This document shows, one piece after another, positions 1 through 45,534 of a stretch of DNA of 64,000 bases. The DNA is from Haliotis rufescens. Its lineage: Eukaryota. Numbering within the stretch: the stretch's first letter is position 1; the number at the start of each line of letters is the position of its first letter. The notes beneath the pieces were generated by a model. That model saw only the letters and a program-made list of their open reading frames with translations. It was not told the origin of the DNA and did not search any database. The position numbers and the translations under genes are program-made. The stretch is from contig NW_025964383.1 of NCBI RefSeq assembly GCF_023055435.1, positions 17,298,001 to 17,362,000 on the forward strand, written 5' to 3'.

Positions 1-281
1 AGTTGTTGGAGGAGTTGGCTGTCATCTTCCGCATCAGATGGTAGACTTGGGTATCTGAAAACAATAAAACGGGTAATTAGAAATCTCGCTAAATGTGTTC
101 ACAACAATGTCATTTTATTTTGTTCAATTCTAAAATTCAGTGTGATACCAATATTGCCATGTTTGCAGGGGACTGAAAAAGAGCACAGTTCATATTTACC
201 TAATGTCAGGATCTCTTTCACTGCATTGTCGTGGGCAATAAGGAGACGTCTCAGCTTGATGGCAACTTGAACTGGATCCAT
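1..281 (-). CDS. Array gene, partial copy (exon 1 at 281-200; exon 2 starts at 54 and is cut by the window edge)
   Basis: Same sequence as the complete copies; ATG at 281, donor AG|GTAAAT at 200/199, acceptor TTTTCAG| at 55/54. Confidence 0.75.
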
Positions 282-398
282 TTTCTAGGGCCTTCGGACA
301 CAACACTAGAATGCAGTCGGATGAAATACTACAGGAATTCAGTAGCGCCAAATTTGGATAATTGGAAAGTAGATGTGTTCGTTCTCACGGATTGAGAT

Positions 399-637
399 GA
401 AGTGAAGGACTCCAGTCCGCGCAAAACATTTATACTGACCCTTAGTATAAACATAGTAGTGGAGATTTATAGATCAAAGAGAGCATTTTCGAAGCCAGTG
501 GCGAGATCAAAGCTACACTGCAACTTCATTAGGCTTTGATCCGAAAGGAATCTCACTGTCCACTTGAGAAACCAATCAACTTCTTGTCAAAACAAGTTTC
601 CGTATAAAGGGAGAGGTCTGAGAAGAGTTCAACCAAT
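399..637 (-). promoter_or_regulatory. Pol II promoter of the array gene (representative; present in every unit): Inr TCACTTC 405-399, TATAAAT 434-428, TCF/LEF-type sites 471-479, 504-512 and 534-541, CCAAT 572-576 and 633-637
   Basis: The first T of TATAAAT (434) lies 31 nt upstream of the Inr A (403). AGATCAAAG twice, CTTTGATC once and CCAAT twice are read directly from the sequence. Confidence 0.7.
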
Positions 638-2053
638 CTAGTCCTGTTATCTCCAGGGATTATCAATCATTGTTAATTGATTAAATCGGGATTGATCAAA
701 CGGCGCAGTACGTTGTGATACTTAAAAATCCGATGTGGTTACTTTCGCATCCACAGAAACCAAGTCACAGAAACTTCTATCAGCTTGGAAATCGTGTGAT
801 GCTTCTCTGAACGTTTAGTTTAATTAAAAAACCCGAGAAAACCATGTCCACAATCCTAAGAAATCCTTACTCTGGTAGGCAAAGGCAAAGTGAATAAATG
901 TACAGTCAAATCTTGAACTTATTGTACACATCTGTTTGAGGTCGTGAATGCTATGATAATCTGACCATTTTCCCAACCCGTCTTACATGATCGAAATACA
1001 GCACGTATGTTTTGAAGCATTTCAAATACTATTTTTTATGAATACCATCATCATGGTATAATTGAAGCAGCTCATTTGGCTTAAGTATCTGGATATTAAC
1101 CATCTTAGAAGCTTTTGGATGGACGTCGGCTACTTAAAAGGTTACTATATAAATAAATAAATAGGCATGTACAATAAAGTTTATGTGTGTTAAATGATCT
1201 AGAGACATCATCTTCAGTGTATAACTGTCATGTTTTTGGGAGAATTACAAAGCACGGTGTCATGATTTATATCTTTGAATACAGAATGCTGTTAAAGCAC
1301 ATAATGGAAATTGGAGTATGTTGCTAGATAAACATAAGCACGTTGTTAGCATTGTTTTTGAAAGATGCCCACTGTTTCATGTCAGGATATTCTGATCTTT
1401 ACTTTTTAGTGCCTTTCAGGGGAATAGTATTCATCAAGTGCTGACTTGGATCAGAAATGTTATTTGGCCTGTGTTGATGTCAATGTTTCAATTTCCTTTT
1501 GTTTTCCATGCTGTCTACATTGACAATTTTTAACATGCATGACTCTCTCCTTAAGCACTTGGGCATGTACATTTCAAAAGGAAAGAGAAACAATTAAATG
1601 CTCTGATAATATGAAATACAACATGACATATATATCTCGCAGATCAATATCATATGGGGTTGTGGTTCGTCTGTCTAAATCCTTTTGCTATAGGATCGGC
1701 ATGGATACGGAAAACGAATTGCAACGTTCCAAACTGTATTTAATGTTATGGTGCAACCATTACATTGGAATCTCTTCTTCTCCATCATACCTAATGTCCA
1801 AATGTGTTTCATTTCAATTGATCTTATATTCAATAGTCTGTATCTTTTTCCTATTTCAAAGAATAGATTAAGGACGATATCTGCGAATGCTTGCCATACT
1901 CAGAACCTAGTAAAATGATCGAAGGCTTGGTATTGTGAGATACCATCTCAAATTAACCTTTTCTCTCTCTCACAAACTTTCTATACGAATGATGTCTTCA
2001 AGATGTCGTGAGCGTGTCAGCAAATGATCAATATTATAATATCGACTTCATTA

Positions 2054-2059
2054 TTTATT
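2054..2059 (-). terminator. AATAAA polyadenylation signal of the array gene (representative)
   Basis: TTTATT on the + strand, about 150 nt downstream of the TAA stop at 2213-2211. Confidence 0.6.
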
Positions 2060-2210
2060 TCCTCAGCATATTCATCAACAAACAAATGTGGTTTACAATA
2101 TAATAGGATGCCCTTTGCACACTGTCAGGCAACATTTGTGTACAATAACAAAAAATGAATAACAAGGTAAATGCAGCACTAGTTGATGTGGATGGGACTT
2201 GTGATTTCCC

Positions 2211-2832
2211 TTAGGCGTTTCTATGAAGTGCACTGTCGTCTACAGACAAAGCTCGACTGAGAGTCGTCATATCGTAGCTGCTGTCGTTGCTGTATAGGTC
2301 TCCCTGGTCTTCGTCGTCCTCACTATATGAGCTGTCGGACAAGAGTTCCGTGAAGGAAGCTTCATCATCGTTGAAAGAGGTATCTGCATTCCAGTCCGCC
2401 TCCGAATCACTCTCTGCAGAAGCATCTTTGGTGATGGCGTTTACACAGGCTTGCACCTCTTGCCACTTGAGTTGTCTGTAGATGGTAAACATCTCCTTGA
2501 CACCTTCCAGCACCCATCGTCTCTGGATCAGCTGTTCACCTCGGATTATGCAGTTGTTGGAGGAGTTGGCTGTCATCTTCCGCATCAGATGGTAGACTTG
2601 GGTATCTGAAAACAATAAAACGGGTAATTAGAAATCTCGCTAAATGTGTTCACAACAATGTCATTTTATTTTGTTCAATTCTAAAATTCAGTGTGATACC
2701 AATATTGCCATGTTTGCAGGGGACTGAAAAAGAGCACAGTTCATATTTACCTAATGTCAGGATCTCTTTCACTGCATTGTCGTGGGCAATAAGGAGACGT
2801 CTCAGCTTGATGGCAACTTGAACTGGATCCAT
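2211..2832 (-). CDS. Array gene copy 1: complement(join(2211..2605,2751..2832)), 158-aa uncharacterised protein, helical N-terminal half and acidic Ser/Asp-rich C-terminal tail
   Basis: 82-nt exon 1 (MDPVQVAIKLRRLLIAHDNAVKEILTL plus G) and 395-nt exon 2 (AT ACC CAA...) join as G|AT = Asp in frame. Total is 477 nt = 158 aa plus stop. Confidence 0.8.
2606..2750 (-). other. 145-bp phase-1 spliceosomal intron (representative)
   Basis: Donor TTAG|GTAAAT, branch-like CTAAT about 25 nt before the acceptor, T-rich tract GTTTTATTGTTTTCAG|. Confidence 0.8.
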
Positions 2833-4761
2833 TTTCTAGGGCCTTCGGACACAACACTAGAATGCAGTCGGATGAAATACTACAGGAATTCAGTAGCGCC
2901 AAATTTGGATAATTGGAAAGTAGATGTGTTCGTTCTCACGGATTGAGATGAAGTGAAGGACTCCAGTCCGCGCAAAACATTTATACTGACCCTTAGTATA
3001 AACATAGTAGTGGAGATTTATAGATCAAAGAGAGCATTTTCGAAGCCAGTGGCGAGATCAAAGCTACACTGCAACTTCATTAGGCTTTGATCCGAAAGGA
3101 ATCTCACTGTCCACTTGAGAAACCAATCAACTTCTTGTCAAAACAAGTTTCCGTATAAAGGGAGAGGTCTGAGAAGAGTTCAACCAATCTAGTCCTGTTA
3201 TCTCCAGGGATTATCAATCATTGTTAATTGATTAAATCGGGATTGATCAAACGGCGCAGTACGTTGTGATACTTAAAAATCCGATGTGGTTACTTTCGCA
3301 TCCACAGAAACCAAGTCACAGAAACTTCTATCAGCTTGGAAATCGTGTGATGCTTCTCTGAACGTTTAGTTTAATTAAAAAACCCGAGAAAACCATGTCC
3401 ACAATCCTAAGAAATCCTTACTCTGGTAGGCAAAGGCAAAGTGAATAAATGTACAGTCAAATCTTGAACTTATTGTACACATCTGTTTGAGGTCGTGAAT
3501 GCTATGATAATCTGACCATTTTCCCAACCCGTCTTACATGATCGAAATACAGCACGTATGTTTTGAAGCATTTCAAATACTATTTTTTATGAATACCATC
3601 ATCATGGTATAATTGAAGCAGCTCATTTGGCTTAAGTATCTGGATATTAACCATCTTAGAAGCTTTTGGATGGACGTCGGCTACTTAAAAGGTTACTATA
3701 TAAATAAATAAATAGGCATGTACAATAAAGTTTATGTGTGTTAAATGATCTAGAGACATCATCTTCAGTGTATAACTGTCATGTTTTTGGGAGAATTACA
3801 AAGCACGGTGTCATGATTTATATCTTTGAATACAGAATGCTGTTAAAGCACATGATGGAAATTGGAGTATGTTGCTAGATAAACATAAGCACGTTGTTAG
3901 CATTGTTTTTGAAAGATGCCCACTGTTTCATGTCAGGATATTCTGATCTTTACTTTTTAGTGCCTTTCAGGGGAATAGTATTCATCAAGTGCTGACTTGG
4001 ATCAGAAATGTTATTTGGCCTGTGTTGATGTCAATGTTTCAATTTCCTTTTGTTTTCCATGCTGTCTACATTGACAATTTTTAACATGCATGACTCTCTC
4101 CTTAAGCACTTGGGCATGTACATTTCAAAAGGAAAGAGAAACAATTAAATGCTCTGATAATATGAAATACAACATGACATATATATCTCGCAGATCAATA
4201 TCATATGGGGTTGTGGTTCGTCTGTCTAAATCCTTTTGCTATAGGATCGGCATGGATACGGAAAACGAATTGCAACGTTCCAAACTGTATTTAATGTTAT
4301 GGTGCAACCATTACATTGGAATCTCTTCTTCTCCATCATACCTAATGTCCAAATGTGTTTCATTTCAATTGATCTTATATTCAATAGTCTGTATCTTTTT
4401 CCTATTTCAAAGAATAGATTAAGGACGATATCTGCGAATGATTGCCATACTCAGAACCAAGTAAAATGATCGAAGGCTTGGTATTGTGAGATACCATCTC
4501 AAATTAACCTTTTCTCTCTCTCACAAACTTTCTATACGAATGATGTCTTCAAGATGTCGTGAGCGTGTCAGCAAATGATCAATATTATAATATCGACTTC
4601 ATTATTTATTTCCTCAGCATATTCATCAACAAACAAATGTGGTTTACAATATAATAGGATGCCCTTTGCACACTGTCAGGCAACATTTGTGTACAATAAC
4701 AAAAAATGAATAACAAGGTAAATGCAGCACTAGTTGATGTGGATGGGACTTGTGATTTCCC

Positions 4762-5383
4762 TTAGGCGTTTCTATGAAGTGCACTGTCGTCTACAGACAA
4801 AGCTCGACTGAGAGTCGTCATATCGTAGCTGCTGTCGTTGCTGTATAGGTCTCCCTGGTCTTCGTCGTCCTCACTATATGAGCTGTCGGACAAGAGTTCC
4901 GTGAAGGAAGCTTCATCATCGTTGAAAGAGGTATCTGCATTCCAGTCCGCCTCCGAATCACTCTCTGCAGAAGCATCTTTGGTGATGGCGTTTACACAGG
5001 CTTGCACCTCTTGCCACTTGAGTTGTCTGTAGATGGTAAACATCTCCTTGACACCTTCCAGCACCCATCGTCTCTGGATCAGCTGTTCACCTCGGATTAT
5101 GCAGTTGTTGGAGGAGTTGGCTGTCATCTTCCGCATCAGATGGTAGACTTGGGTATCTGAAAACAATAAAACGGGTAATTAGAAATCTCGCTAAATGTGT
5201 TCACAACAATGTCATTTTATTTTGTTCAATTCTAAAATTCAGTGTGATACCAATATTGCCATGTTTGCAGGGGACTGAAAAAGAGCACAGTTCATATTTA
5301 CCTAATGTCAGGATCTCTTTCACTGCATTGTCGTGGGCAATAAGGAGACGTCTCAGCTTGATGGCAACTTGAACTGGATCCAT
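4762..5383 (-). CDS. Array gene copy 2 (two exons, 158 aa)
   Basis: Same structure and protein as copy 1. Confidence 0.78.
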
Positions 5384-7312
5384 TTTCTAGGGCCTTCGGA
5401 CACAACACTAGAATGCAGTCGGATGAAATACTACAGGAATTCAGTAGCGCCAAATTTGGATAATTGGAAAGTAGATGTGTTCGTTCTCACGGATTGAGAT
5501 GAAGTGAAGGACTCCAGTCCGCGCAAAACATTTATACTGACCCTTAGTATAAACATAGTAGTGGAGATTTATAGATCAAAGAGAGCATTTTCGAAGCCAG
5601 TGGCGAGATCAAAGCTACACTGCAACTTCATTAGGCTTTGATCCGAAAGGAATCTCACTGTCCACTTGAGAAACCAATCAACTTCTTGTCAAAACAAGTT
5701 TCCGTATAAAGGGAGAGGTCTGAGAAGAGTTCAACCAATCTAGTCCTGTTATCTCCAGGGATTATCAATCATTGTTAATTGATTAAATCGGGATTGATCA
5801 AACGGCGCAGTACGTTGTGATACTTAAAAATCCGATGTGGTTACTTTCGCATCCACAGAAACCAAGTCACAGAAACTTCTATCAGCTTGGAAATCGTGTG
5901 ATGCTTCTCTGAACGTTTAGTTTAATTAAAAAACCCGAGAAAACCATGTCCACAATCCTAAGAAATCCTTACTCTGGTAGGCAAAGGCAAAGTGAATAAA
6001 TGTACAGTCAAATCTTGAACTTATTGTACACATCTGTTTGAGGTCGTCAATGCTATGATAATCTGACCATTTTCCCAACCCGTCTTACATGATCGAAATA
6101 CAGCACGTATGTTTTGAAGCATTTCAAATACTATTTTTTATGAATACCATCATCATGGTATAATTGAAGCAGCTCATTTGGCTTAAGTATCTGGATATTA
6201 ACCATCTTAGAAGCTTTTGGATGGACGTCGGCTACTTAAAAGGTTACTATATAAATAAATAAATAGGCATGTACAATAAAGTTTATGTGTGTTAAATGAT
6301 CTAGAGACATCATCTTCAGTGTATAACTGTCATGTTTTTGGGAGAATTACAAAGCACGGTGTCATGATTTATATCTTTGAATACAGAATGCTGTTAAAGC
6401 ACATGATGGAAATTGGAGTATGTTGCTAGATAAACATAAGCACGTTGTTAGCATTGTTTTTGAAAGATGCCCACTGTTTCATGTCAGGATATTCTGATCT
6501 TTACTTTTTAGTGCCTTTCAGGGGAATAGTATTCATCAAGTGCTGACTTGGATCAGAAATGTTATTTGGCCTGTGTTGATGTCAATGTTTCAATTTCCTT
6601 TTGTTTTCCATGCTGTCTACATTGACAATTTTTAACATGCATGACTCTCTCCTTAAGCACTTGGGCATGTACATTTCAAAAGGAAAGAGAAACAATTAAA
6701 TGCTCTGATAATATGAAATACAACATGACATATATATCTCGCAGATCAATATCATATGGGGTTGTGGTTCGTCTGTCTAAATCCTTTTGCTATAGGATCG
6801 GCATGGATACGGAAAACGAATTGCAACGTTCCAAACTGTATTTAATGTTATGGTGCAACCATTACATTGGAATCTCTTCTTCTCCATCATACCTAATGTC
6901 CAAATGTGTTTCATTTCAATTGATCTTATATTCAATAGTCTGTATCTTTTTCCTATTTCAAAGAATAGATTAAGGACGATATCTGCGAATGATTGCCATA
7001 CTCAGAACCAAGTAAAATGATCGAAGGCTTGGTATTGTGAGATACCATCTCAAATTAACCTTTTCTCTCTCTCACAAACTTTCTATACGAATGATGTCTT
7101 CAAGATGTCGTGAGCGTGTCAGCAAATGATCAATATTATAATATCGACTTCATTATTTATTTCCTCAGCATATTCATCAACAAACAAATGTGGTTTACAA
7201 TATAATAGGATGCCCTTTGCACACTGTCAGGCAACATTTGTGTACAATAACAAAAAATGAATAACAAGGTAAATGCAGCACTAGTTGATGTGGATGGGAC
7301 TTGTGATTTCCC

Positions 7313-7934
7313 TTAGGCGTTTCTATGAAGTGCACTGTCGTCTACAGACAAAGCTCGACTGAGAGTCGTCATATCGTAGCTGCTGTCGTTGCTGTATAGG
7401 TCTCCCTGGTCTTCGTCGTCCTCACTATATGAGCTGTCGGACAAGAGTTCCGTGAAGGAAGCTTCATCATCGTTGAAAGAGGTATCTGCATTCCAGTCCG
7501 CCTCCGAATCACTCTCTGCAGAAGCATCTTTGGTGATGGCGTTTACACAGGCTTGCACCTCTTGCCACTTGAGTTGTCTGTAGATGGTAAACATCTCCTT
7601 GACACCTTCCAGCACCCATCGTCTCTGGATCAGCTGTTCACCTCGGATTATGCAGTTGTTGGAGGAGTTGGCTGTCATCTTCCGCATCAGATGGTAGACT
7701 TGGGTATCTGAAAACAATAAAACGGGTAATTAGAAATCTCGCTAAATGTGTTCACAACAATGTCATTTTATTTTGTTCAATTCTAAAATTCAGTGTGATA
7801 CCAATATTGCCATGTTTGCAGGGGACTGAAAAAGAGCACAGTTCATATTTACCTAATGTCAGGATCTCTTTCACTGCATTGTCGTGGGCAATAAGGAGAC
7901 GTCTCAGCTTGATGGCAACTTGAACTGGATCCAT
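7313..7934 (-). CDS. Array gene copy 3 (two exons, 158 aa)
   Basis: Same structure and protein as copy 1. Confidence 0.78.
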
Positions 7935-9863
7935 TTTCTAGGGCCTTCGGACACAACACTAGAATGCAGTCGGATGAAATACTACAGGAATTCAGTAGCG
8001 CCAAATTTGGATAATTGGAAAGTAGATGTGTTCGTTCTCACGGATTGAGATGAAGTGAAGGACTCCAGTCCGCGCAAAACATTTATACTGACCCTTAGTA
8101 TAAACATAGTAGTGGAGATTTATAGATCAAAGAGAGCATTTTCGAAGCCAGTGGCGAGATCAAAGCTACACTGCAACTTCATTAGGCTTTGATCCGAAAG
8201 GAATCTCACTGTCCACTTGAGAAACCAATCAACTTCTTGTCAAAACAAGTTTCCGTATAAAGGGAGAGGTCTGAGAAGAGTTCAACCAATCTAGTCCTGT
8301 TATCTCCAGGGATTATCAATCATTGTTAATTGATTAAATCGGGATTGATCAAACGGCGCAGTACGTTGTGATACTTAAAAATCCGATGTGGTTACTTTCG
8401 CATCCACAGAAACCAAGTCACAGAAACTTCTATCAGCTTGGAAATCGTGTGATGCTTCTCTGAACGTTTAGTTTAATTAAAAAACCCGAGAAAACCATGT
8501 CCACAATCCTAAGAAATCCTTACTCTGGTAGGCAAAGGCAAAGTGAATAAATGTACAGTCAAATCTTGAACTTATTGTACACATCTTTTTGAGGTCGTCA
8601 ATGCTATGATAATCTGACCATTTTCCCAACCCGTCTTACATGATCGAAATACAGCACGTATGTTTTGAAGCATTTCAAATACTATTTTTTATGAATACCA
8701 TCATCATGGTATAATTGAAGCAGCTCATTTGGCTTAAGTATCTGGATATTAACCATCTTAGAAGCTTTTGGATGGACGTCGGCTACTTAAAAGGTTACTA
8801 TATAAATAAATAAATAGGCATGTACAATAAAGTTTATGTGTGTTAAATGATCTAGAGACATCATCTTCAGTGTATAACTGTCATGTTTTTGGGAGAATTA
8901 CAAAGCACGGTGTCATGATTTATATCTTTGAATACAGAATGCTGTTAAAGCACATGATGGAAATTGGAGTATGTTGCTAGATAAACATAAGCACGTTGTT
9001 AGCATTGTTTTTGAAAGATGCCCACTGTTTCATGTCAGGATATTCTGATCTTTACTTTTTAGTGCCTTTCAGGGGAATAGTATTCATCAAGTGCTGACTT
9101 GGATCAGAAATGTTATTTGGCCTGTGTTGATGTCAATGTTTCAATTTCCTTTTGTTTTCCATGCTGTCTACATTGACAATTTTTAACATGCATGACTCTC
9201 TCCTTAAGCACTTGGGCATGTACATTTCAAAAGGAAAGAGAAACAATTAAATGCTCTGATAATATGAAATACAACATGACATATATATCTCGCAGATCAA
9301 TATCATATGGGGTTGTGGTTCGTCTGTCTAAATCCTTTTGCTATAGGATCGGCATGGATACGGAAAACGAATTGCAACGTTCCAAACTGTATTTAATGTT
9401 ATGGTGCAACCATTACTTTGGAATCTCTTCTTCTCCATCATACCTAATGTCCAAATGTGTTTCATTTCAATTGATCTTATATTCAATAGTCTGTATCTTT
9501 TTCCTATTTCAAAGAATAGATTAAGGACGATATCTGCGAATGATTGCCATACTCAGAACCAAGTAAAATGATCGAAGGCTTGGTATTGTGAGATACCATC
9601 TCAAATTAACCTTTTCTCTCTCTCACAAACTTTCTATACGAATGATGTCTTCAAGATGTCGTGAGCGTGTCAGCAAATGATCAATATTATAATATCGACT
9701 TCATTATTTATTTCCTCAGCATATTCATCAACAAACAAATGTGGTTTACAATATAATAGGATGCCCTTTGCACACTGTCAGGCAACATTTGTGTACAATA
9801 ACAAAAAATGAATAACAAGGTAAATGCAGCACTAGTTGATGTGGATGGGACTTGTGATTTCCC

Positions 9864-10485
9864 TTAGGCGTTTCTATGAAGTGCACTGTCGTCTACAGAC
9901 AAAGCTCGACTGAGAGTCGTCATATCGTAGCTGCTGTCGTTGCTGTATAGGTCTCCCTGGTCTTCGTCGTCCTCACTATATGAGCTGTCGGACAAGAGTT
10001 CCGTGAAGGAAGCTTCATCGTCATTGAAAGAGGTATCTGCATTCCAGTCCGCCTCCGAATCACTCTCTGCAGAAGCATCTTTGGTGATGGCGTTTACACA
10101 GGCTTGCACCTCTTGCCACTTGAGTTGTCTGTAGATGGTAAACATCTCCTTGACACCTTCCAGCACCCATCGTCTCTGGATCAGCTGTTCACCTCGGATT
10201 ATGCAGTTGTTGGAGGACTTGGCTGTCATCTTCCGCATCAGATGGTAGACTTGGGTATCTGAAAACAATAAAACGGGTAATTAGAAATCTCGCTAAATGT
10301 GTTCACAACAATGTCATTTTATTTTGTTCAATTCTAAAATTCAGTGTGATACCAATATTGCCATGTTTGCAGGGGACTGAAAAAGAGCACAGTTCATATT
10401 TACCTAATGTCAGGATCTCTTTCACTGCATTGTCGTGGGCAATAAGGAGACGTCTCAGCTTGATGGCAACTTGAACTGGATCCAT
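9864..10485 (-). CDS. Array gene copy 4 (158 aa, TANSS to TAKSS variant)
   Basis: Same structure; one amino-acid change visible in the ORF track. Confidence 0.78.
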
Positions 10486-12415
10486 TTTCTAGGGCCTTCG
10501 GACACAACACTAGAATGCAGTCGGATGAAATACTACAGGAATTCAGTAGCGCCAAATTTGGATAATTGGAAAGTAGATGTGTTCGTTCTCACGGATTGAG
10601 ATGAAGTGAAGGACTCCAGTCCGCGCAAAACATTTATACTGACCCTTAGTATAAACATAGTAGTGGAGATTTATAGATCAAAGAGAGCATTTTCGAAGCC
10701 AGTGGCGAGATCAAAGCTACACTGCAACTTCATTAGGCTTTGATCCGAAAGGAATCTCACTGTCCACTTGAGAAACCAATCAACTTCTTGTCAAAACAAG
10801 TTTCCGTATAAAGGGAGAGGTCTGAGAAGAGTTCAACCAATCTAGTCCTGTTATCTCCAGGGATTATCAATCATTGTTAATTGATTAAATCGGGATTGAT
10901 CAAACGGCGCAGTACGTTGTGATACTTAAAAATCCGATGTGGTTACTTTCGCATCCACAGAAACCAAGTCACAGAAACTTCTATCAGCTTGGAAATCGTG
11001 TGATGCTTCTCTGAACGTTTAGTTTCAATTAAAAAACCCGAGAAAACCATGTCCACAATCCTAAGAAATCCTTACTCTGGTAGGCAAAGGCAAAGTGAAT
11101 AAATGTACAGTCAAATCTTGAACTTATTGTACACATCTGTTTGAGGTCGTAAATGCTATGATAATCTGACCATTTTCCCAACCCGTCTTACATGATCGAA
11201 ATACAGCACGTATGTTTTGAAGCATTTCAAATACTATTTTTTATGAATACCATCATCATGGTATAATTGAAGCAGCTCATTTGGCTTAAGTATCTGGATA
11301 TTAACCATCTTAGAAGCTTTTGGATGGACGTCGGCTACTTAAAAGGTTACTATATAAATAAATAAATAGGCATGTACAATAAAGTTTATGTGTGTTAAAT
11401 GATCTAGAGACATCATCTTCAGTGTATAACTGTCATGTTTTTGGGAGAATTACAAAGCACGGTGTCATGATTTATATCTTTGAATACAGAATGCTGTTAA
11501 AGCACATGATGGAAATTGGAGTATGTTGCTAGATAAACATAAGCACGTTGTTAGCATTGTTTTTGAAAGATGCCCACTGTTTCATGTCAGGATATTCTGA
11601 TCTTTACTTTTTAGTGCCTTTCAGGGGAATAGTATTCATCAAGTGCTGACTTGGATCAGAAATGTTATTTGGCCTGTGTTGATGTCAATGTTTCAATTTC
11701 CTTTTGTTTTCCATGCTGTCTACATTGACAATTTTTAACATGCATGACTCTCTCCTTAAGCACTTGGGCATGTACATTTCAAAAGGAAAGAGAAACAATT
11801 AAATGCTCTGATAATATGAAATACAACATGACATATATATCTCGCAGATCAATATCATATGGGGTTGTGGTTCGTCTGTCTAAATCCTTTTGCTATAGGA
11901 TCGGCATGGATACGGAAAACGAATTGCAACGTTCCAAACTGTATTTAATATTATGGTGCAACCATTACATTGGAATCTCTTCTTCTCCATCATACCTAAT
12001 GTCCAAATGTGTTTCATTTCAATTGATCTTATATTCAATAGTCTGTATCTTTTTCCTATTTCAAAGAATAGATTAAGGACGATATCTGCGAATGCTCTCC
12101 ATACTCAGAACCAAGTAAAATGATCGAAGGCTTGGTATTGTGAGATACCATCTCAAATTAACCTTTTCTCTCTCTCACAAACTTTCTATACGAATGATGT
12201 CTTCAAGATGTCGTGAGCGTGTCAGCAAATGATCAATATTATAATATCGACTTCATTATTTATTTCCTCAGCATATTCATCAACAAACAAATGTGGTTTA
12301 CAATATAATAGGATGCCCTTTGCACACTGTCAGGCAACATTTGTGTACAATAACAAAAAATGAATAACAAGGTAAATGCAGCACTAGTTGATGTGGATGG
12401 GACTTGTGATTTCCC

Positions 12416-13037
12416 TTAGGCGTTTCTATGAAGTGCACTGTCGTCTACAGACAAAGCTCGACTGAGAGTCGTCATATCGTAGCTGCTGTCGTTGCTGTAT
12501 AGGTCTCCCTGGTCTTCGTCGTCCTCACTATATGAGCTGTCGGACAAGAGTTCCGTGAAGGAAGCTTCATCATCGTTGAAAGAGGTATCTGCATTCCAGT
12601 CCGCCTCCGAATCACTCTCTGCAGAAGCATCTTTGGTGATGGCGTTTACACAGGCTTGCACCTCTTGCCACTTGAGTTGTCTGTAGATGGTAAACATCTC
12701 CTTGACACCTTCCAGCACCCATCGTCTCTGGATCAGCTGTTCACCTCGGATTATGCAGTTGTTGGAGGAGTTGGCTGTCATCTTCCGCATCAGATGGTAG
12801 ACTTGGGTATCTGAAAACAATAAAACGGGTAATTAGAAATCTCGGTAAATGTGTTCACAACAATGTCATTTTATTTTGTTCAATTCTAAAATTCAGTGTG
12901 ATACCAATATTGCCATGTTTGCAGGGGACTGAAAAAGAGCACAGTTCATATTTACCTAATGTCAGGATCTCTTTCACTGCATTGTCGTGGGCAATAAGGA
13001 GACGTCTCAGCTTGATGGCAACTTGAACTGGATCCAT
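12416..13037 (-). CDS. Array gene copy 5 (two exons, 158 aa)
   Basis: Same structure and protein as copy 1. Confidence 0.78.
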
Positions 13038-14966
13038 TTTCTAGGGCCTTCGGACACAACACTAGAATGCAGTCGGATGAAATACTACAGGAATTCAGTA
13101 GCGCCAAATTTGGATAATTGGAAAGTAGATGTGTTCGTTCTCACGGATTGAGATGAAGTGAAGGACTCCAGTCCGCGCAAAACATTTATACTGACCCTTA
13201 GTATAAACATAGTAGTGGAGATTTATAGATCAAAGAGAGCATTTTCGAAGCCAGTGGCGAGATCAAAGCTACACTGCAACTTCATTAGGCTTTGATCCGA
13301 AAGGAATCTCACTGTCCACTTGAGAAACCAATCAACTTCTTGTCAAAACAAGTTTCCGTATAAAGGGAGAGGTCTGAGAAGAGTTCAACCAATCTAGTCC
13401 TGTTATCTCCAGGGATTATCAATCATTGTTAATTGATTAAATCGGGATTGATCAAACGGCGCAGTACGTTGTGATACTTAAAAATCCGATGTGGTTACTT
13501 TCGCATCCACAGAAACCAAGTCACAGAAACTTCTATCAGCTTGGAAATCGTGTGATGCTTCTCTGAACGTTTAGTTTAATTAAAAAACCCGAGAAAACCA
13601 TGTCCACAATCCTAAGAAATCCTTACTCTGGTAGGCAAAGGCAAAGTGAATAAATGTACAGTCAAATCTTGAACTTATTGTACACATCTGTTTGAGGTCG
13701 TAAATGCTATGATAATCTGACCATTTTCCCAACCCGTCTTACATGATCGAAATACAGCACGTATGTTTTGAAGCATTTCAAATACTATTTTTTATGAATA
13801 CCATCATCATGGTATAATTGAAGCAGCTCATTTGGCTTAAGTATCTGGATATTAACCATCTTAGAAGCTTTTGGATGGACGTCGGCTACTTAAAAGGTTA
13901 CTATATAAATAAATAAATAGGCATGTACAATAAAGTTTATGTGTGTTAAATGATCTAGAGACATCATCTTCAGTGTATAACTGTCATGTTTTTGGGAGAA
14001 TTACAAAGCACGGTGTCATGATTTATATCTTTGAATACAGAATGCTGTTAAAGCACATGATGGAAATTGGAGTATGTTGCTAGATAAACATAAGCACGTT
14101 GTTAGCATTGTTTTTGAAAGATGCCCACTGTTTCATGTCAGGATATTCTGATCTTTACTTTTTAGTGCCTTTCAGGGGAATAGTATTCATCAAGTGCTGA
14201 CTTGGATCAGAAATGTTATTTGGCCTGTGTTGATGTCAATGTTTCAATTTCCTTTTGTTTTCCATGCTGTGTACATTGACAATTTTTAACATGCATGACT
14301 CTCTCCTTAAGCACTTGGGCATGTACATTTCAAAAGGAAAGAGAAACAATTAAATGCTCTGATAATATGAAATACAACATGACATATATATCTCGCAGAT
14401 CAATATCATATGGGGTTGTGGTTCGTCTGTCTAAATCCTTTTGCTATAGGATCGGCATGGATACGGAAAACGAATTGCAACGTTCCAAACTGTATTTAAT
14501 GTTATGGTGCAACCATTACATTGGAATCTCTTCTTCTCCATCATACCTAATGTCCAAATGTGTTTCATTTCAATTGATCTTATATTCAATAGTCTGTATC
14601 TTTTTCCTATTTCAAAGAATAGATTAAGGACGATATCTGCGAATGATTGCCATACTCAGAACCAAGTAAAATGATCGAAGGCTTGGTATTGTGAGATACC
14701 ATCTCAAATTAACCTTTTCTCTCTCTCACAAACTTTCTATACGAATGATGTCTTCAAGATGTCGTGAGCGTGTCAGCAAATGATCAATATTATAATATCG
14801 ACTTCATTATTTATTTCCTCAGCATATTCATCAACAAACAAATGTGGTTTACAATATAATAGGATGCCCTTTGCACACTGTCAGGCAACATTTGTGTACA
14901 ATAACAAAAAATGAATAACAAGGTAAATGCAGCACTAGTTGATGTGGATGGGACTTGTGATTTCCC

Positions 14967-15588
14967 TTAGGCGTTTCTATGAAGTGCACTGTCGTCTACA
15001 GACAAAGCTCGACTGAGAGTCGTCATATCGTAGCTGCTGTCGTTGCTGTATAGGTCTCCCTGGTCTTCGTCGTCCTCACTATATGAGCTGTCGGACAAGA
15101 GTTCCGTGAAGGAAGCTTCATCATCGTTGAAAGAGGTATCTGCATTCCAGTCCGCCTCCGAATCACTCTCTGCAGAAGCATCTTTGGTGATGGCGTTTAC
15201 ACAGGCTTGCACCTCTTGCCACTTGAGTTGTCTGTAGATGGTAAACATCTCCTTGACACCTTCCAGCACCCATCGTCTCTGGATCAGCTGTTCACCTCGG
15301 ATTATGCAGTTGTTGGAGGAGTTGGCTGTCATCTTCCGCATCAGATGGTAGACTTGGGTATCTGAAAACAATAAAACGGGTAATTAGAAATCTCGGTAAA
15401 TGTGTTCACAACAATGTCATTTTATTTTGTTCAATTCTAAAATTCAGTGTGATACCAATATTGCCATGTTTGCAGGGGACTGAAAAAGAGCACAGTTCAT
15501 ATTTACCTAATGTCAGGATCTCTTTCACTGCATTGTCGTGGGCAATAAGGAGACGTCTCAGCTTGATGGCAACTTGAACTGGATCCAT
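14967..15588 (-). CDS. Array gene copy 6 (two exons, 158 aa)
   Basis: Same structure and protein as copy 1. Confidence 0.78.
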
Positions 15589-17517
15589 TTTCTAGGGCCT
15601 TCGGACACAACACTAGAATGCAGTCGGATGAAATACTACAGGAATTCAGTAGCGCCAAATTTGGATAATTGGAAAGTAGATGTGTTCGTTCTCACGGATT
15701 GAGATGAAGTGAAGGACTCCAGTCCGCGCAAAACATTTATACTGACCCTTAGTATAAACATAGTAGTGGAGATTTATAGATCAAAGAGAGCATTTTCGAA
15801 GCCAGTGGCGAGATCAAAGCTACACTGCAACTTCATTAGGCTTTGATCCGAAAGGAATCTCACTGTCCACTTGAGAAACCAATCAACTTCTTGTCAAAAC
15901 AAGTTTCCGTATAAAGGGAGAGGTCTGAGAAGAGTTCAACCAATCTAGTCCTGTTATCTCCAGGGATTATCAATTATTGTTAATTGATTAAATCGGGATT
16001 GATCAAACGGCGCAGTACGTTGTGATACTTAAAAATCCGATGTGGTTACTTTCGCATCCACAGAAACCAAGTCACAGAAACTTCTATCAGCTTGGAAATC
16101 GTGTGATGCTTCTCTGAACGTTTAGTTTAATTAAAAAACCCGAGAAAACCATGTCCACAATCCTAAGAAATCCTTACTCTGGTAGGCAAAGGCAAAGTGA
16201 ATAAATGTACAGTCAAATCTTGAACTTATTGTACACATCTGTTTGAGGTCGTAAATGCTATGATAATCTGACCATTTTCCCAACCCGTCTTACATGATCG
16301 AAATACAGCACGTATGTTTTGAAGCATTTCAAATACTATTTTTTATGAATACCATCATCATGGTATAATTGAAGCAGCTCATTTGGCTTAAGTATCTGGA
16401 TATTAACCATCTTAGAAGCTTTTGGATGGACGTCGGCTACTTAAAAGGTTACTATATAAATAAATAAATAGGCATGTACAATAAAGTTTATGTGTGTTAA
16501 ATGATCTAGAGACATCATCTTCAGTGTATAACTGTCATGTTTTTGGGAGAATTACAAAGCACGGTGTCATGATTTATATCTTTGAATACAGAATGCTGTT
16601 AAAGCACATGATGGAAATTGGAGTATGTTGCTAGATAAACATAAGCACATTGTTAGCATTGTTTTTGAAAGATGCCCACTGTTTCATGTCAGGATATTCT
16701 GATCTTTACTTTTTAGTGCCTTTCAGGGGAATAGTATTCATCAAGTGCTGACTTGGATCAGAAATGTTATTTGGCCTGTGTTGATGTCAATGTTTCAATT
16801 TCCTTTTGTTTTCCATGCTGTCTACATTGACAATTTTTAACATGCATGACTCTCTCCTTAAGCACTTGGGCATGTACATTTCAAAAGGAAAGAGAAACAA
16901 TTAAATGCTCTGATAATATGAAATACAACATGACATATATATCTCGCAGATCAATATCATATGGGGTTGTGGTTCGTCTGTCTAAATCCTTTTGCTATAG
17001 GATCGGAATGGATACGGAAAACGAATTGCAACGTTCCAAACTGTATTTAATGTTATGGTGCAACCATTACATTGGAATCTCTTCTTCTCCATCATACCTA
17101 ATGTCCAAATGTGTTTCATTTCAATTGATCTTATATTCAATAGTCTGTATCTTTTTCCTATTTCAAAGAATAGATTAAGGACGATATCTGCGAATGATTG
17201 CCATACTCAGAACCAAGTAAAATGATCGAAGGCTTGGTATTGTGAGATACCATCTCAAATTAACCTTTTCTCTCTCTCACAAACTTTCTATACGAATGAT
17301 GTCTTCAAGATGTCGTGAGCGTGTCAGCAAATGATCAATATTATAATATCGACTTCATTATTTATTTCCTCAGCATATTCATCAACAAACAAATGTGGTT
17401 TACAATATAATAGGATGCCCTTTGCACACTGTCAGGCAACATTTGTGTACAATAACAAAAAATGAATAACAAGGTAAATGCAGCACTAGTTGATGTGGAT
17501 GGGTCTTGTGATTTCCC

Positions 17518-18139
17518 TTAGGCGTTTCTATGAAGTGCACTGTCGTCTACAGACAAAGCTCGACTGAGAGTCGTCATATCGTAGCTGCTGTCGTTGCTGT
17601 ATAGGTCTCCCTGGTCTTCGTCGTCCTCACTATATGAGCTGTCGGACAAGAGTTCAGTGAAGGAAGCTTCATCATCGTTGAAAGAGGTATCTGCATTCCA
17701 GTCCGCCTCCGAATCACTCTCTGCAGAAGCATCTTTGGTGATGGCGTTTACACAGGCTTGCACCTCTTGCCACTTGAGTTGTCTGTAGATGGTAAACATC
17801 TCCTTGACACCTTCCAGCACCCATCGTCTCTGGATCAGCTGTTCACCTCGGATTATGCAGTTGTTGGAGGAGTTGGCTGTCATCTTCCGCATCAGATGGT
17901 AGACTTGGGTATCTGAAAACAATAAAACGGGTAATTAGAAATCTCGCTAAATGTGTTCACAACAATGTCATTTTATTTTGTTCAATTCTAAAATTCAGTG
18001 TGATACCAATATTGCCATGTTTGCAGGGGACTGAAAAAGAGCACAGTTCATATTTACCTAATGTCAGGATCTCTTTCACTGCATTGTCGTGGGCAATAAG
18101 GAGACGTCTCAGCTTGATGGCAACTTGAACTGGATCCAT
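17518..18139 (-). CDS. Array gene copy 7 (two exons, 158 aa)
   Basis: Same structure and protein as copy 1. Confidence 0.78.
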
Positions 18140-20068
18140 TTTCTAGGGCCTTCGGACACAACACTAGAATGCAGTCGGATGAAATACTACAGGAATTCAG
18201 TAGCGCCAAATTTGGATAATTGGAAAGTAGATGGGTTCGTTCTCACGGATTGAGATGAAGTGAAGGACTCCAGTCCGCGCAAAACATTTATACTGACCCT
18301 TAGTATAAACATAGTAGTGGAGATTTATAGATCAAAGAGAGCATTTTCGAAGCCAGTGGCGAGATCAAAGCTACACTGCAACTTCATTAGGCTTTGATCC
18401 GAAAGGAATCTCACTGTCCACTTGAGAAACCAATCAACTTCTTGTCAAAACAAGTTTCCGTATAAAGGGAGAGGTCTGAGAAGAGTTCAACCAATCTAGT
18501 CCTGTTATCTCCAGGGATTATCAATCATTGTTAATTGATTAAATCGGGATTGATCAAACGGCGCAGTACGTTGTGATACTTAAAAATCCGATGTGGTTAC
18601 TTTCGCATCCACAGAAACCAAGTCACAGAAACTTCTATCAGCTTGGAAATCGTGTGATGCTTCTCTGAACGTTTAGTTTAATTAAAAAACCCGAGAAAAC
18701 CATGTCCACAATCCTAAGAAATCCTTACTCTGGTAGGCAAAGGCAAAGTGAATAAATGTACAGTCAAATCTTGAACTTATTGTACACATCTGTTTGAGGT
18801 CGTAAATGCTATGATAATCTGACCATTTTCCCAACCCGTCTTACATGATCGAAATACAGCACGTATGTTTTGAAGCATTTCAAATACTATTTTTTATGAA
18901 TACCATCATCATGGTATAATTGAAGCAGCTCATTTGGCTTAAGTATCTGGATATTAACCATCTTAGAAGCTTTTGGATGGACGTCGGCTACTTAAAAGGT
19001 TACTATATAAATAAATAAATAGGCATGTACAATAAAGTTTATGTGTGTTAAATGATCTAGAGACATCATCTTCAGTGTATAACTGTCATGTTTTTGGGAG
19101 AATTACAAAGCACGGTGTCATGATTTATATCTTTGAATACAGAATGCTGTTAAAGCACATGATGGAAATTGGAGTATGTTGCTAGATAAACATAAGCACG
19201 TTGTTAGCATTGTTTTTGAAAGATGCCCACTGTTTCATGTCAGGATATTCTGATCTTTACTTTTTAGTGCCTTTCAGGGGAATAAGATTCATCAAGTGCT
19301 GACTTGGATCAGAAATGTTATTTGGCCTGTGTTGATGTCAATGTTTCAATTTCCTTTTGTTTTCCATGCTGTCTACATTGACAATTTTTAACATGCATGA
19401 CTCTCTCCGTAAGCACTTGGGCATGTACATTTCAAAAGGAAAGAGAAACAATTAAATGCTCTGATAATATGAAATACAACATGACATATATATCTCGCAG
19501 ATCAATATCATATGGGGTTGTGGTTCGTCTGTCTAAATCCTTTTGCTATAGGATCGGCATGGATACGGAAAACGAATTGCAACGTTCCAAACTGTATTTA
19601 ATGTTATGGTGCAACCATTACATTGGAATCTCTTCTTCTCCATCATACCTAATGTCCAAATGTGTTTCATTTCAATTGATCTTATATTCAATAGTCTGTA
19701 TCTTTTTCCTATTTCAAAGAATAGATTAAGGACGATATCTGCGAATGATTGCCATACTCAGAACCAAGTAAAATGATCGAAGGCTTGGTATTGTGAGATA
19801 CCATCTCAAATTAACCTTTTCTCTCTCTCACAAACTTTCTATACGAATGATGTCTTCAAGATGTCGTGAGCGTGTCAGCAAATGATCAATATTATAATAT
19901 CGACTTCATTATTTATTTCCTCAGCATATTCATCAACAAACAAATGTGGTTTACAATATAATAGGATGCCCTTTGCACACTGTCAGGCAACATTTGTGTA
20001 CAATAACAAAAAATGAATAACAAGGTAAATGCAGCACTAGTTGATGTGGATGGGACTTGTGATTTCCC

Positions 20069-20681
20069 TTAGGCGTTTCTATGAAGTGCACTGTCGTCTA
20101 CAGACAAAGCTCGACTGAGAGTCGTCATATCGTAGCTGCTGTCGTTGCTGTATAGGTCTCCCTGGTCCTCACTATATGAGCTGTCGGACAAGAGTTCCGT
20201 GAAGGAAGCTTCATCATCGTTGAAAGAGGTATCTGCATTCCAGTCCGCCTCCGAATCACTCTCTGCAGAAGCATCTTTGGTGATGGCGTTTACACAGGCT
20301 TGCACCTCTTGCCACTTGAGTTGTCTGTAGATGGTAAACATCTCCTTGACACCTTCCAGCACCCATCGTCTCTGGATCAGCTGTTCACCTCGGATTATGC
20401 AGTTGTTGGAGGAGTTGGCTGTCATCTTCCCCATCAGATGGTAGACTTGGGTATCTGAAAACAATAAAACGGGTAATTAGAAATCTCGCTAAATGTGTTC
20501 ACAACAATGTCATTTTATTTTGTTCAATTCTAAAATTCAGTGTGATACCAATATTGCCATGTTTGCAGGGGACTGAAAAAGAGCACAGTTCATATTTACC
20601 TAATGTCAGGATCTCTTTCACTGCATTGTCGTGGGCAATAAGGAGACGTCTCAGCTTGATGGCAACTTGAACTGGATCCAT
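20069..20681 (-). CDS. Array gene copy 8 (155 aa; in-frame 9-bp deletion in the acidic tail, R to G variant)
   Basis: SEDDEDQ becomes SEDQ; frame preserved. Confidence 0.78.
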
Positions 20682-45515: not shown

Positions 45516-45534
45516 TTATTTTTTATTTTTTATT

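What the first reader, a model, noticed from the sequence alone, without database searches (positions are those of the whole stretch)
2054..2985. The 2551-bp 'satellite' hides a complete spliced gene for an unrecognised 158-aa protein
Seen: TATA, Inr, ATG, GT donor, CTAAT branch, TTTTCAG acceptor, in-frame junction, TAA and AATAAA occur in correct order on the minus strand of every unit. The product is MDPVQVAIKLRRLLIAHDNAVKEILTL-DTQVYHLM...LEGVKEMFTIYRQLKWQEVQACV followed by an acidic tail. Known analogy: gene-bearing macrosatellites such as D4Z4/DUX4 and RS447/USP17. Inference: a dosage-amplified gene, possibly germline or early embryonic. The helical part reminds me of uncharacterised molluscan proteins with an LEGVxxMFxxY-like motif, but this is unverified recall.
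Basis: partly seen in the sequence, partly recalled or inferred. Interest (0 to 1): 0.78.

Follow-up and report, generated by a model that had tools for sequence, protein, structure and literature searches.

The report
Abalone 37-copy gene array, already annotated
A 2.5-kb repeat in the red abalone genome is a head-to-tail array of about 37 intact copies of a small two-exon gene that the public annotation already lists, and its protein belongs to an unstudied family so far seen only in molluscs.

Summary
On the minus strand of the 2551-bp unit lie TATAAA, ATG (2832), an 82-nt first exon, a 145-nt GT..AG intron, an in-frame second exon, TAA (2213-2211) and AATAAA, giving 158 aa. All 37 copies of the 104-kb array keep ATG, GT, AG and an open frame. 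TATAAA stands in 32 of 37.

The gene is real. Four diverged paralogue groups in the same genome split the same Asp codon (G|AT) with a phase-1 intron of very different length. A profile finds 47 relatives, and every named one is molluscan. One 58-nt contig of a public run joins 2605 to 2751 exactly.

It is not unrecognised. RefSeq lists the identical 158-aa protein as many "uncharacterized protein LOC..." genes in Haliotis rufescens, and 158-aa orthologues in three other abalones.

No Pfam family, solved relative or specific fold was found. The model is a confident helical hairpin, an acidic disordered linker and a conserved C-terminal helix. Function and stage of expression remain untested.

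The scan has already described other gene arrays of this kind in this genome.

The parts
1..64000 (-). Part of a head-to-tail array of a 2551-bp unit. The window holds 22 gene copies. The whole array is G000:C605:17265656-17368807 with 37 copies.
   Evidence: Anchor spacing of 2542-2552 bp; 37 copies across the fetched flanks.
2980..2985 (-). TATAAA, 153 nt upstream of the ATG. This is the proposed core promoter; it is not shown to be the start site.
   Evidence: Read. Present at -153 in 32 of 37 copies. The paralogues L024 and L025 also carry TATA-like motifs about 55-115 nt upstream of their ATG (read by eye).
2751..2832 (-). Coding part of exon 1, 82 nt: ATG plus 27 codons plus the first base of Asp28. 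It encodes the start of helix 1, with the LxxLLxxHD motif.
   Evidence: The exon-1 peptide matches L024 (48% identity over 27 aa) and L025 (44%) on the strand of exon 2 and upstream of it.
2606..2750 (-). Phase-1 intron of 145 nt: GTAAAT ... CTAAT (2631-2627) ... ttttattgttttcag.
   Evidence: GT and AG are present in 37 of 37 copies, and the intron is 144-149 nt long. A contig of run X1 skips exactly 2606-2750. The same codon is split in four paralogue groups.
2211..2605 (-). Coding part of exon 2 with the stop TAA at 2213-2211. It encodes the rest of the helical hairpin, the acidic linker and the C-terminal helix.
   Evidence: The 130-aa peptide is 100% identical to RefSeq 158-aa proteins. 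Paralogues reach 40-46% identity.
2041..2210 (-). 3' untranslated region with AATAAA at 2059-2054.
   Evidence: AATAAA is present in 37 of 37 copies. Contigs of runs X1 and X5 end at 2053 and 2041 (table 8). The tool warns that holes prove nothing.

Best explanation
SHOWN.
- The 2551-bp 'satellite' is a tandem array of 37 near-identical copies, spanning 104 kb, of a real two-exon protein-coding gene of red abalone (Haliotis rufescens).
- The gene is already annotated in RefSeq as a series of 'uncharacterized protein LOC...' loci.
- Its 158-aa product belongs to a protein family without a Pfam model or a name. The family has been found so far only in molluscs (gastropods and bivalves).
- Family members share four features: an N-terminal helix (A..L..LL..HD.A), a second helix (R..V.EGV+.M[FY]..Y+..KW.Q[VI]Q), a variable acidic Ser/Asp/Glu-rich linker, and a short conserved C-terminal helix ending [CS].[FL].R.. 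at the C-terminus.
- In abalone, a phase-1 intron lies in one and the same Asp codon in all four paralogue groups.
- 158-aa copies are annotated many times over in four abalone species. They differ by 1-5 residues within a species and by 18-24 residues between distant species, which is the pattern of concerted evolution.

INFERRED (about 0.25 for the specific role).
- The protein has no signal peptide or membrane segment that I could see by eye.
- I take it to be an intracellular coiled-coil adaptor. It would pair or oligomerise through the helical hairpin, and would use its acidic, probably phosphorylated linker and C-terminal helix to bind a basic partner.
- I take the array to serve dosage: many promoters firing at once where much product is needed fast, most plausibly in the germline or the early embryo.
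For: Gene model:
- All signals are present in order and in frame.
- 37 of 37 copies are intact.
- The exon-2 peptide is 100% identical over its full length to 158-aa RefSeq proteins of H. rufescens. 158-aa proteins of H. cracherodii, H. rubra and H. asinina are also annotated, many accessions each.

Conserved reading frame and intron:
- Paralogues at C179, C583, C113 and C13 are 26-46% identical to the first sequence in alignment A1.
- Exon 1 is recognisable in C179 and C583 and in C113 and C13.
- C179, C583 and C113 all split G|AT (Asp), with introns of 382, 866 and about 233 nt against 145 nt here.

Family:
- 47 representatives at E <= 0.001, and 13 at E <= 1e-10.
- All named members among those looked up are molluscs.

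Splicing:
- A contig of run X1 joins 2605|2751, skipping 145 nt, with CT..AC on the plus strand, which is GT..AG on the gene strand.
- No copy without the intron was found in the assembly.

Constraint:
- The only CDS indel among 33 aligned units is an in-frame 9-nt deletion, against 16 indels in the spacer and 2 in the intron.
- 7 of the 10 CDS differences listed against other individuals or species are synonymous.
- In organisms D and E the gene region differs by 1.2-1.5%, against about 3-6% plus gaps in the spacer (table 8).
- Residues 46-72 are identical in the four species' representatives printed.

Structure: AlphaFold2 with the family alignment gives helices 3-44 and 47-94 at pLDDT 87-98, a low-confidence stretch at 95-135, and a helix at 136-157.
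Against: Splicing evidence is thin.
- The spliced junction was seen in 1 of 4 runs laid.
- The contig is 58 nt, with 28 and 30 letters on the two sides. That is under the tool's own 31-letter rule for bridging.
- The run is only guessed to be RNA.
- The same run also has an unspliced contig (depth 12.8 against 16.8 for the spliced one).
- Runs X5, X9 and X10 show only the unspliced form.

The start site is open. Contigs of X1 and X5 run on upstream of the TATA box, to 3736 and 3423, at equal depth. The proposed start site is therefore unconfirmed, and part of these runs may be DNA.

Within the array there is no sign of selection. About 12 amino-acid-changing sites appear among 37 copies, against 16 variable CDS sites among 33 units. 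SNP density is 33.5 per kb in the CDS against 50.4 per kb in the spacer.

Nothing bears directly on function. There was no Pfam hit, no match to solved sequences (best E = 1), only generic helical-hairpin fold matches, and the Atlas was blank. The absence of a signal peptide was judged by eye only. Tissue and stage of expression were not seen.
Confidence: 0.8

Rival explanations
1. The array is a young, selectively neutral amplification. One gene of the family was copied about 37 times, and the copies are intact only because they are recent and are kept alike by unequal crossing-over. The work is done by the single-copy paralogues or by one array copy, and copy number has no function.
For: Copies are more than 99% alike. 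Variation within the array looks unselected: about three in four variable CDS sites change the protein, and SNP density in the CDS is only modestly below that of the spacer. Three copies have lost their TATA box to LINE insertions and two to a point change, and none of them has been removed. Gene arrays of this look are common in this genome (s1-813590, s1-808089).
Against: Multi-copy 158-aa genes are annotated in four Haliotis species, with fixed differences between species groups and no change of length. The array state is therefore old, or arises repeatedly. Synonymous differences are in excess between individuals or species: 7 of the 10 listed. No frame-breaking indel occurs in 37 copies, although 18 indels lie elsewhere in the unit.
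Confidence: 0.15
2. The protein made is not the spliced 158-aa form. It is a product of the unspliced RNA: either the 60-aa read-through of exon 1, or a shorter protein started at an internal Met of exon 2.
For: Unspliced contigs across the intron are present in all four runs laid, and in X1 at a depth near that of the spliced contig. Exon 2 has Met35 and Met38 in frame.
Against: Exon 1 is conserved as protein in the paralogues, at 44-48% over all 27 residues, with the same splice phase. It forms the first half of helix 1 of a confidently predicted hairpin. The unspliced contigs may be DNA or pre-mRNA.
Confidence: 0.03
3. This is a non-coding satellite in which the open frame and the signals are chance.
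For: An open stretch of 138 codons or more arises in 25 of 1000 shuffles of the unit, so length alone is weak evidence. No Pfam family matches.
Against: There are homologues with a conserved frame and a conserved intron position in the same genome, and across gastropods and bivalves. An exact junction contig exists.
Confidence: 0.01

Closest known systems
D4Z4 / DUX4 macrosatellite (human). Recalled from general knowledge; no paper was read here.
   Same: A kilobase-sized unit is repeated head to tail tens of times, and each unit carries a complete open reading frame with its own promoter. The array is easily mistaken for satellite DNA.
   Different: DUX4 is an intronless double-homeobox retrogene in a 3.3-kb GC-rich unit that is normally silenced, and only the last unit has a poly(A) signal. 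Here the gene has an intron, and every unit has its own AATAAA (37 of 37). The protein has no homeodomain or any Pfam domain. The unit is AT-rich, at 37-40% GC.
RS447 / USP17 megasatellite (human). Recalled.
   Same: A tandem array in which each unit holds an intact, transcribed protein-coding gene, and copies are kept alike by concerted evolution.
   Different: USP17 is an intronless deubiquitinase in a 4.7-kb unit. The abalone protein has no enzyme domain and belongs to a family seen only in molluscs.
Amplified helical-protein gene families of germline conflict or dosage, such as mouse Slx/Sly (Xlr/SYCP3-like) and Drosophila Stellate/Su(Ste), and the early histone gene arrays of sea urchins. 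Recalled.
   Same: Tens of near-identical copies of a small gene kept by concerted evolution. The suspected roles are a burst of product or an arms race.
   Different: No sequence or fold relation was found. Sex linkage, germline expression and small-RNA involvement were not examined.
Other gene arrays of this same genome noted by the scan (BTB gene array s1-813590; mucin-like array s1-808089).
   Same: Same genome and same look: satellite-like repeats that are arrays of intact, spliced, already annotated genes from mollusc or abalone families.
   Different: A different protein family. I did not re-test those reports.
ESCRT-III (Snf7/CHMP) and ING-type helical hairpins
   Same: A long antiparallel two-helix hairpin of about 90 residues superposes at 1.2-1.7 A. 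Foldseek gives TM about 0.54, and VIA-align gives Z about 11.
   Different: Foldseek E is 0.25 or worse. The Z values are flat across dozens of unrelated hairpin proteins and lie under the tool's stated noise level of about 13 for helical models. No Snf7 Pfam match was found among 29 family members. This is a common arrangement and does not indicate kinship.

Membership tests
Gene-bearing macrosatellite / tandem gene array | Head-to-tail repeats of a unit of 1 kb or more, in tens of copies, spanning tens to hundreds of kb | tested here: met
   The period is 2551 bp. There are 37 copies between C605:17265656 and 17368807.
Gene-bearing macrosatellite / tandem gene array | Each unit carries a complete gene | tested here: met
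   37 of 37 copies have ATG, GT, AG, an open frame and AATAAA. TATAAA is present in 32 of 37.
Gene-bearing macrosatellite / tandem gene array | The units are transcribed and processed | tested here: inconclusive
   An exact junction contig appeared in 1 of 4 runs. It is 58 nt long, and the run is only guessed to be RNA. RefSeq models give the same protein, but I could not see what evidence they rest on.
Gene-bearing macrosatellite / tandem gene array | Copy number varies between individuals | not tested
Unnamed mollusc family of small helical-hairpin proteins (defined here from alignments A1 and A2) | N-terminal helix with L..LL..HD.A, then a helix with EGV[KR].M[FY] ... KW.Q[VI]Q | tested here: met
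   Invariant in A1: L34, K37, L53, R56, E61, G62, V63, K74, W75, V78, I85. The consensus of 29 members is. The profile search gave 47 hits.
Unnamed mollusc family of small helical-hairpin proteins (defined here from alignments A1 and A2) | Acidic linker, then a C-terminal motif ending R-x-x at the C-terminus | tested here: met
   R156 is invariant in A1, and the C-terminal block aligns in most of the 29 members.
Unnamed mollusc family of small helical-hairpin proteins (defined here from alignments A1 and A2) | A phase-1 intron splitting the Asp codon (G|AT) after helix-1 residue 27 | tested here: met
   Seen in the window, L024, L025 and L026. The acceptor ..AG|AT is also present in L027 and L028. 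Not testable in bivalves, because no DNA was at hand.
DUX4-type (double homeobox) macrosatellite gene | A homeodomain protein encoded by an intronless retrogene | tested here: not met
   No Pfam domain at all. The gene has an intron.
ESCRT-III / Snf7 | A match to the Snf7 family profile, and the core of helices 1-4 with an autoinhibitory C-terminus | tested here: not met
   No Snf7 hit in 29 members at E <= 0.1. The fold match is limited to the generic hairpin, at E 0.25.

The most novel reading that the evidence does not exclude
This family, seen only in molluscs, would be a new class of small coiled-coil factors with an acidic tail, acting in the germline or at the start of embryonic transcription. 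The array of about 37 copies has been kept alike in four abalone species. It would then be either a burst device, with many promoters firing at once as in early histone arrays, or the product of a genetic conflict, as with Slx/Sly or Stellate.

One hint is indirect. A heritable LINE has landed three separate times about 15 nt downstream of the array's TATA box. This would be expected if that promoter is open in germ cells.
Probability: 0.15. Interest if true: 0.6.

Novelty: new member of a known kind. Interest (0 to 1): 0.3.

Why it matters
As a discovery of a hidden gene it does not matter, because the public annotation already calls these genes in four abalone species.

What remains of interest is modest but real.
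- A protein family with no Pfam model, no solved relative and no paper that my two searches by locus name could find (supplements were closed) is spread across gastropods and bivalves.
- The family repeatedly forms tandem clusters: three in this genome, and four consecutively numbered loci in Saccostrea cucullata.
- In abalone it has been driven to about 37 copies that evolve in concert.

The array is a clean natural case for asking why a small non-enzymatic protein is needed in such dosage. It also offers a ready set of conserved motifs and an intron marker for defining the family.

Tried and rejected
Searches and scans that gave nothing:
- Tandem Repeats Finder found nothing, because its longest period is 500. 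The period was measured with an anchor search instead.
- Pfam on the exon peptides gave only KCT2 at E 0.003, below its cut-off, over the acidic tail. I rejected this as a compositional match.
- Pfam on 29 family members gave no family shared by more than 2 members.
- The family profile against solved-structure sequences gave a best E of 1 (APC5), which I rejected.
- The ESM Atlas, queried with the whole protein and with residues 1-94, gave no usable hit.
- Foldseek and VIA-align against the PDB gave only generic helical hairpins (ESCRT-III, ING, prefoldin, IpaB, SMC arms). Foldseek E was 0.25 or worse, and Z was flat at about 11. I rejected these as evidence of kinship.
- The search for homologous proteins with exon 2 of the C179 paralogue found nothing at E <= 0.01 among 1742 candidates, probably because of its His/Gln-rich repeats.
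- Rfam at E <= 0.1 and ARAGORN on bases 1-8000 found no RNA gene in the unit.
- The bacterial promoter and terminator scan found 9 sites against 8.9 expected. It is irrelevant for an animal.
- A paper search on Haliotis, tandem, uncharacterized protein and maternal gave 15 listed titles, none relevant (listing and abstract starts only).
- Two paper searches by 12 locus names found 0 papers.

Readings considered and rejected:
- A transposon or viral origin of the gene. I saw nothing for it: the unit holds no transposon-like ORF, and the intron position is conserved in cellular paralogues.

Steps I could not do:
- Read-depth copy number and a second look at the RNA were not possible.
Full report
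THE OBSERVATION.

Read on the minus strand, window 2985-2054 holds the following in order:
- TATAAA at 2985-2980
- ATG at 2832
- an 82-nt coding exon, 2832-2751
- GTAAAT from 2750
- CTAAT at 2631-2627
- a pyrimidine tract and CAG ending at 2606
- a second exon from 2605 that continues the frame through a split Asp codon (G|AT)
- TAA at 2213-2211
- AATAAA at 2059-2054

Unspliced, the frame ends after 60 aa.

The repeat is real.
- There are 22 anchors in the window, spaced 2542-2552 bp, apart from two gaps of 6006 and 8464 bp.
- Tandem Repeats Finder missed the repeat only because its longest period is 500.
- The window is G000:C605:17298001-17362000 of a 1.33-Gb assembly.
- With the flanks fetched, the array has 37 copies from 17265656 to 17368807.
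- All 37 copies keep ATG, GT, AG and an open frame: 36 give 158 aa and one gives 155 aa through an in-frame 9-nt deletion. The intron is 144-149 nt long.
- AATAAA is present in 37 of 37 copies.
- TATAAA stands at -153 in 32 of 37. Two copies read TATGAA, and three have a LINE between the TATA box and the gene.

On its own, the open frame is only mildly unusual. In 25 of 1000 shuffles of the unit, an open stretch of 138 codons or more arose.

WHAT IT IS.

The exon-2 peptide (130 aa, searched by reference) is 100% identical over its whole length to 158-aa proteins that NCBI names 'uncharacterized protein LOC125377576 / LOC124119715 ... [Haliotis rufescens]'. It is 88% identical to a 158-aa protein of H. 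asinina.

The two 90% clusters hold 158-aa proteins of H. rufescens and H. cracherodii, and of H. asinina and H. rubra. Each distinct sequence often carries several accession numbers. At least 10, 13, 19 and 9 accessions are listed for the four species, with at most 4 shown per sequence.

So the organism is red abalone. The gene is annotated many times over in four species, and it is not unrecognised.

HOMOLOGUES WITH A CONSERVED FRAME AND INTRON.

A six-frame search of the abalone's own genome with exon 2 found the 37 array copies and diverged relatives:
- C179: E 2.8e-16, 41% identity, in an open frame of 278 codons
- C583: E 1.5e-5
- an 81%-identical fragment on C445
- clusters on C113 (several hits between 16.89 and 16.92 Mb) and on C13

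In the fetched loci, the 27-residue exon-1 peptide matches C179 at 48% and C583 at 44%. Both matches lie upstream of exon 2 on the same strand.

Exon structure in the paralogues:

| Locus | Exon 1 | Donor | Intron | Exon 2 starts |
|---|---|---|---|---|
| Window | 82 nt ending in G | GTAAAT | 145 nt | AT |
| C179 (L024) | 82 nt ending in G | GTAAGT | 382 nt | AT |
| C583 (L025) | 82 nt ending in G | GTAGGT | 866 nt | AT |
| C113 (L026) | ends ...ATA G | GTATGT | about 233 nt | AT |

In the C113 and C13 subfamily, the annotated product is P0027 (153 aa). Its exon 1 and exon 2 map as two blocks in L026-L028, and the acceptors read ..AG|AT.

Four paralogue groups thus share one phase-1 intron in the same Asp codon, while intron length and sequence are free. 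This is the signature of a real spliced gene.

Alignment A1 has these invariant residues: L34, K37, L53, R56, E61, G62, V63, K74, W75, V78, I85 and R156.

RANGE OF THE FAMILY.

A profile of A1 against 1.84 billion representatives gave 47 proteins at E <= 0.001, 13 at E <= 1e-10, and 2 at E <= 1e-30.

Of the 20 looked up by exact sequence, 13 carry names and all 13 are molluscan: Lottia, Pecten, Dreissena, Mytilus, Pinctada, Mya, Saccostrea, Mercenaria and Potamilus. The other 7 come from unnamed assemblies.

A second profile search added Ostrea, Crassostrea, Mizuhopecten and Ylistrum. In Saccostrea cucullata, four consecutively numbered loci (LOC134230570 to 573) belong to the family. This suggests tandem duplication there too.

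All names are 'uncharacterized' or 'hypothetical'. The one exception is an 'ANR16-like' protein of Mya, in which the family domain follows ankyrin repeats. I take that for a fused gene model but did not test it.

No non-mollusc member was named. Absence elsewhere is not shown.

THE PROTEIN.

- There was no Pfam family for the exon peptides or for 29 family members.
- There was no solved relative by sequence; the best E was 1.
- The Atlas was blank.

AlphaFold2, given the 29-member alignment, predicts the following:
- helices 3-44 and 47-94, with block means of pLDDT 87-98
- a low-confidence acidic stretch at 95-135
- a helix at 136-157, with pLDDT about 58-75
- overall mean pLDDT 79.5 and pTM 0.58

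Fold searches return only long helical hairpins of unrelated families. Foldseek's best E is 0.25. VIA-align Z is 11.4 at the top and still 9.7 at rank 50, under the tool's stated noise level for helical models.

The fold class is therefore a helical hairpin, a disordered acidic linker and a C-terminal helix. The family cannot be tied to any known one.

RNA.

The look-up of sequencing runs listed no run on record as RNA that holds the stretch. The holders are 'RNA?' guesses or of unknown kind. I laid four runs of four studies on window 1500-4000.

Run X1 (organism A):
- A 58-nt contig joins 2605 to 2751, skipping 145 nt with CT..AC on the plus strand. That is GT..AG on the gene strand and is exactly the predicted junction. 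Its depth is 16.8.
- An unspliced contig over 2578-2780 lies beside it, at depth 12.8.
- The junction contig has 28 and 30 letters on its two sides, just under the 31 that the tool asks for. This is, however, what a de Bruijn unitig made only of junction words would look like.
- No copy without the intron is in the assembly.

Other runs:
- X5, X9 and X10 show only unspliced contigs.
- X9 and X10 cover nearly the whole unit and its tandem junction, as DNA would.
- X1 and X5 have no contig over 1500-2040, and their contigs end at 2053 and 2041, next to AATAAA. The tool warns, however, that holes prove nothing.

The start of transcription is therefore open.

CONSTRAINT.

Within the array, 33 of 36 inter-anchor units were aligned. 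The three with LINE insertions were dropped.

| Region | Length (nt) | Variable sites | Per kb | Indels |
|---|---|---|---|---|
| CDS | 477 | 16 | 33.5 | 1 (in-frame, 9 nt) |
| Spacer | 1606 | 81 | 50.4 | 16 |
| Intron | 145 | 6 | 41.4 | 2 |

About 12 distinct amino-acid-changing sites are seen among the 37 copies. Young variants within the array therefore look unselected.

Between individuals or species the picture differs:
- Of the 10 CDS differences listed, 7 are synonymous. That table shows the best supported and says that 37 more are not shown.
- In organism D, the contig over the gene has 10 other letters in 748. The spacer contigs have 20 plus 4 gaps in 451, and 15 plus 4 gaps in 265.
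- In organism E, the gene contigs have 5 in 344 and 5 in 418. The spacer contigs have 13 plus 4 gaps in 457, and 15 plus 6 gaps in 317 (table 8).

Protein variants differ by 1-5 residues within a species. They differ by 18-24 residues between H. rufescens and H. asinina or H. rubra, with 11 positions fixed between the two species groups. That is the pattern of concerted evolution. Residues 46-72 are identical in the four representatives printed, and most changes lie in the acidic tail.

SURROUNDINGS.

- The unit holds no Rfam family and no tRNA.
- Apart from the gene, its only open frame of 100 codons or more is a 110-codon frame on the plus strand of the spacer. That frame lies where X1 and X5 have no contig.
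- Two LINE copies interrupt the array in the window, and a third lies outside it. The LINE encodes reverse transcriptase plus RNase H, with Pfam E 1.2e-47 and 7.6e-19, and has a 546-aa first ORF.
- The three insertions measure about 3.5, 5.9 and 2.1 kb and all sit at the same base, about 15 nt downstream of the TATA box.
- Organism E has a loose end at the same place.

HOW IT MOST LIKELY WORKS.

Shown: this is a real, spliced, annotated gene in an array of 37 copies that evolves in concert, and it belongs to a family so far seen only in molluscs.

Inferred:
- The protein is intracellular. I saw no signal peptide or membrane segment by eye, and no predictor was run.
- It pairs through its hairpin.
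- It binds a partner through the acidic Ser/Asp/Glu-rich linker and the conserved C-terminal helix. The casein-kinase-2-like look of the linker is my own reading and is untested.
- The array serves dosage.

I put the gene's reality at about 0.95, selection on the protein at about 0.8, and the specific adaptor and germline-dosage reading at about 0.25.

COMPARISON AND NOVELTY.

Structurally this is a gene-bearing macrosatellite, like D4Z4/DUX4 or RS447/USP17. I recalled those; I did not read about them here. It differs in having an intron, a poly(A) signal in every unit, and an unrelated protein.

It is one more of several annotated gene arrays in this genome. I therefore file it as a new member of a known kind.

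The family itself appears undescribed. Two paper searches with 12 locus names found nothing. Supplements, where such identifiers usually sit, were closed.

LIMITS.

- Read laying allows one call, so no DNA control, tissue comparison or copy-number estimate was made.
- The joined spliced model was not sent to any search. The model was searched exon by exon, and the full-length sequences used were the public proteins returned by the tools.

Noticed in passing
window about 36115-39570 and about 42121-48030; a third at G000:C605 between 17280902 and 17285559: Three copies of a non-LTR retrotransposon sit at the same base of the repeat unit, about 15 nt downstream of the gene's TATA box. The element encodes reverse transcriptase plus RNase H, has a 546-aa first ORF, and ends in a (TAAG)n-like tail. 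The copies differ in length (about 3.5, 5.9 and 2.1 kb), and one has an internal deletion, so they look like separate events. A contig of organism E has a loose end at the same base, 2965. The scan has already followed this up (s1-815120).
   Followed up: partly
window 2986-4000 (spacer upstream of the TATA box): Contigs of runs X1 and X5 cover the spacer upstream of the proposed promoter, to 3736 (and 3937-4000) and to 3423, at the same depth as the gene. They show nothing over 1500-2040. This could be an upstream start site, a second transcript on either strand, or DNA in these runs. In X1 a 200-nt stretch (3737-3936) is replaced by 3 letters, which looks like an indel variant of the spacer.
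   Followed up: no
G000:C113:16.89-16.92 Mb (L026, L027) and G000:C13:41.52-41.54 Mb (L028): Two further clusters of a sister subfamily. The annotated product is P0027 (153 aa). The genes have two exons with the same split Asp codon. There are at least 7 hits on C113 and 3 on C13, spaced 2-8 kb apart.
   Followed up: partly
L024 (G000:C179:1906000-1915999), minus strand 5773-4486: An apparently single-copy paralogue of about 301 aa. It keeps the hairpin and the C-terminal motif, but its linker carries a His/Gln-rich tandem repeat (LLQHQHHGGD, about four times). No database protein was found for it by the word-indexed search.
   Followed up: no
L023 (G000:C445:690109-700108), 5001-5123 plus strand: An isolated fragment of about 130 nt, 88% identical in DNA to the middle of exon 2 (residues 49-89, 85% identical as protein). 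No exon 1 was found nearby. It is probably a dead fragment.
   Followed up: no
window 1539-1871 plus strand (repeated in each unit, e.g. 4090-4422): A 110-codon ATG-started open frame in the spacer, kept in several units with a few substitutions. No contig of X1 or X5 covers it. It was not searched against any database.
   Followed up: no
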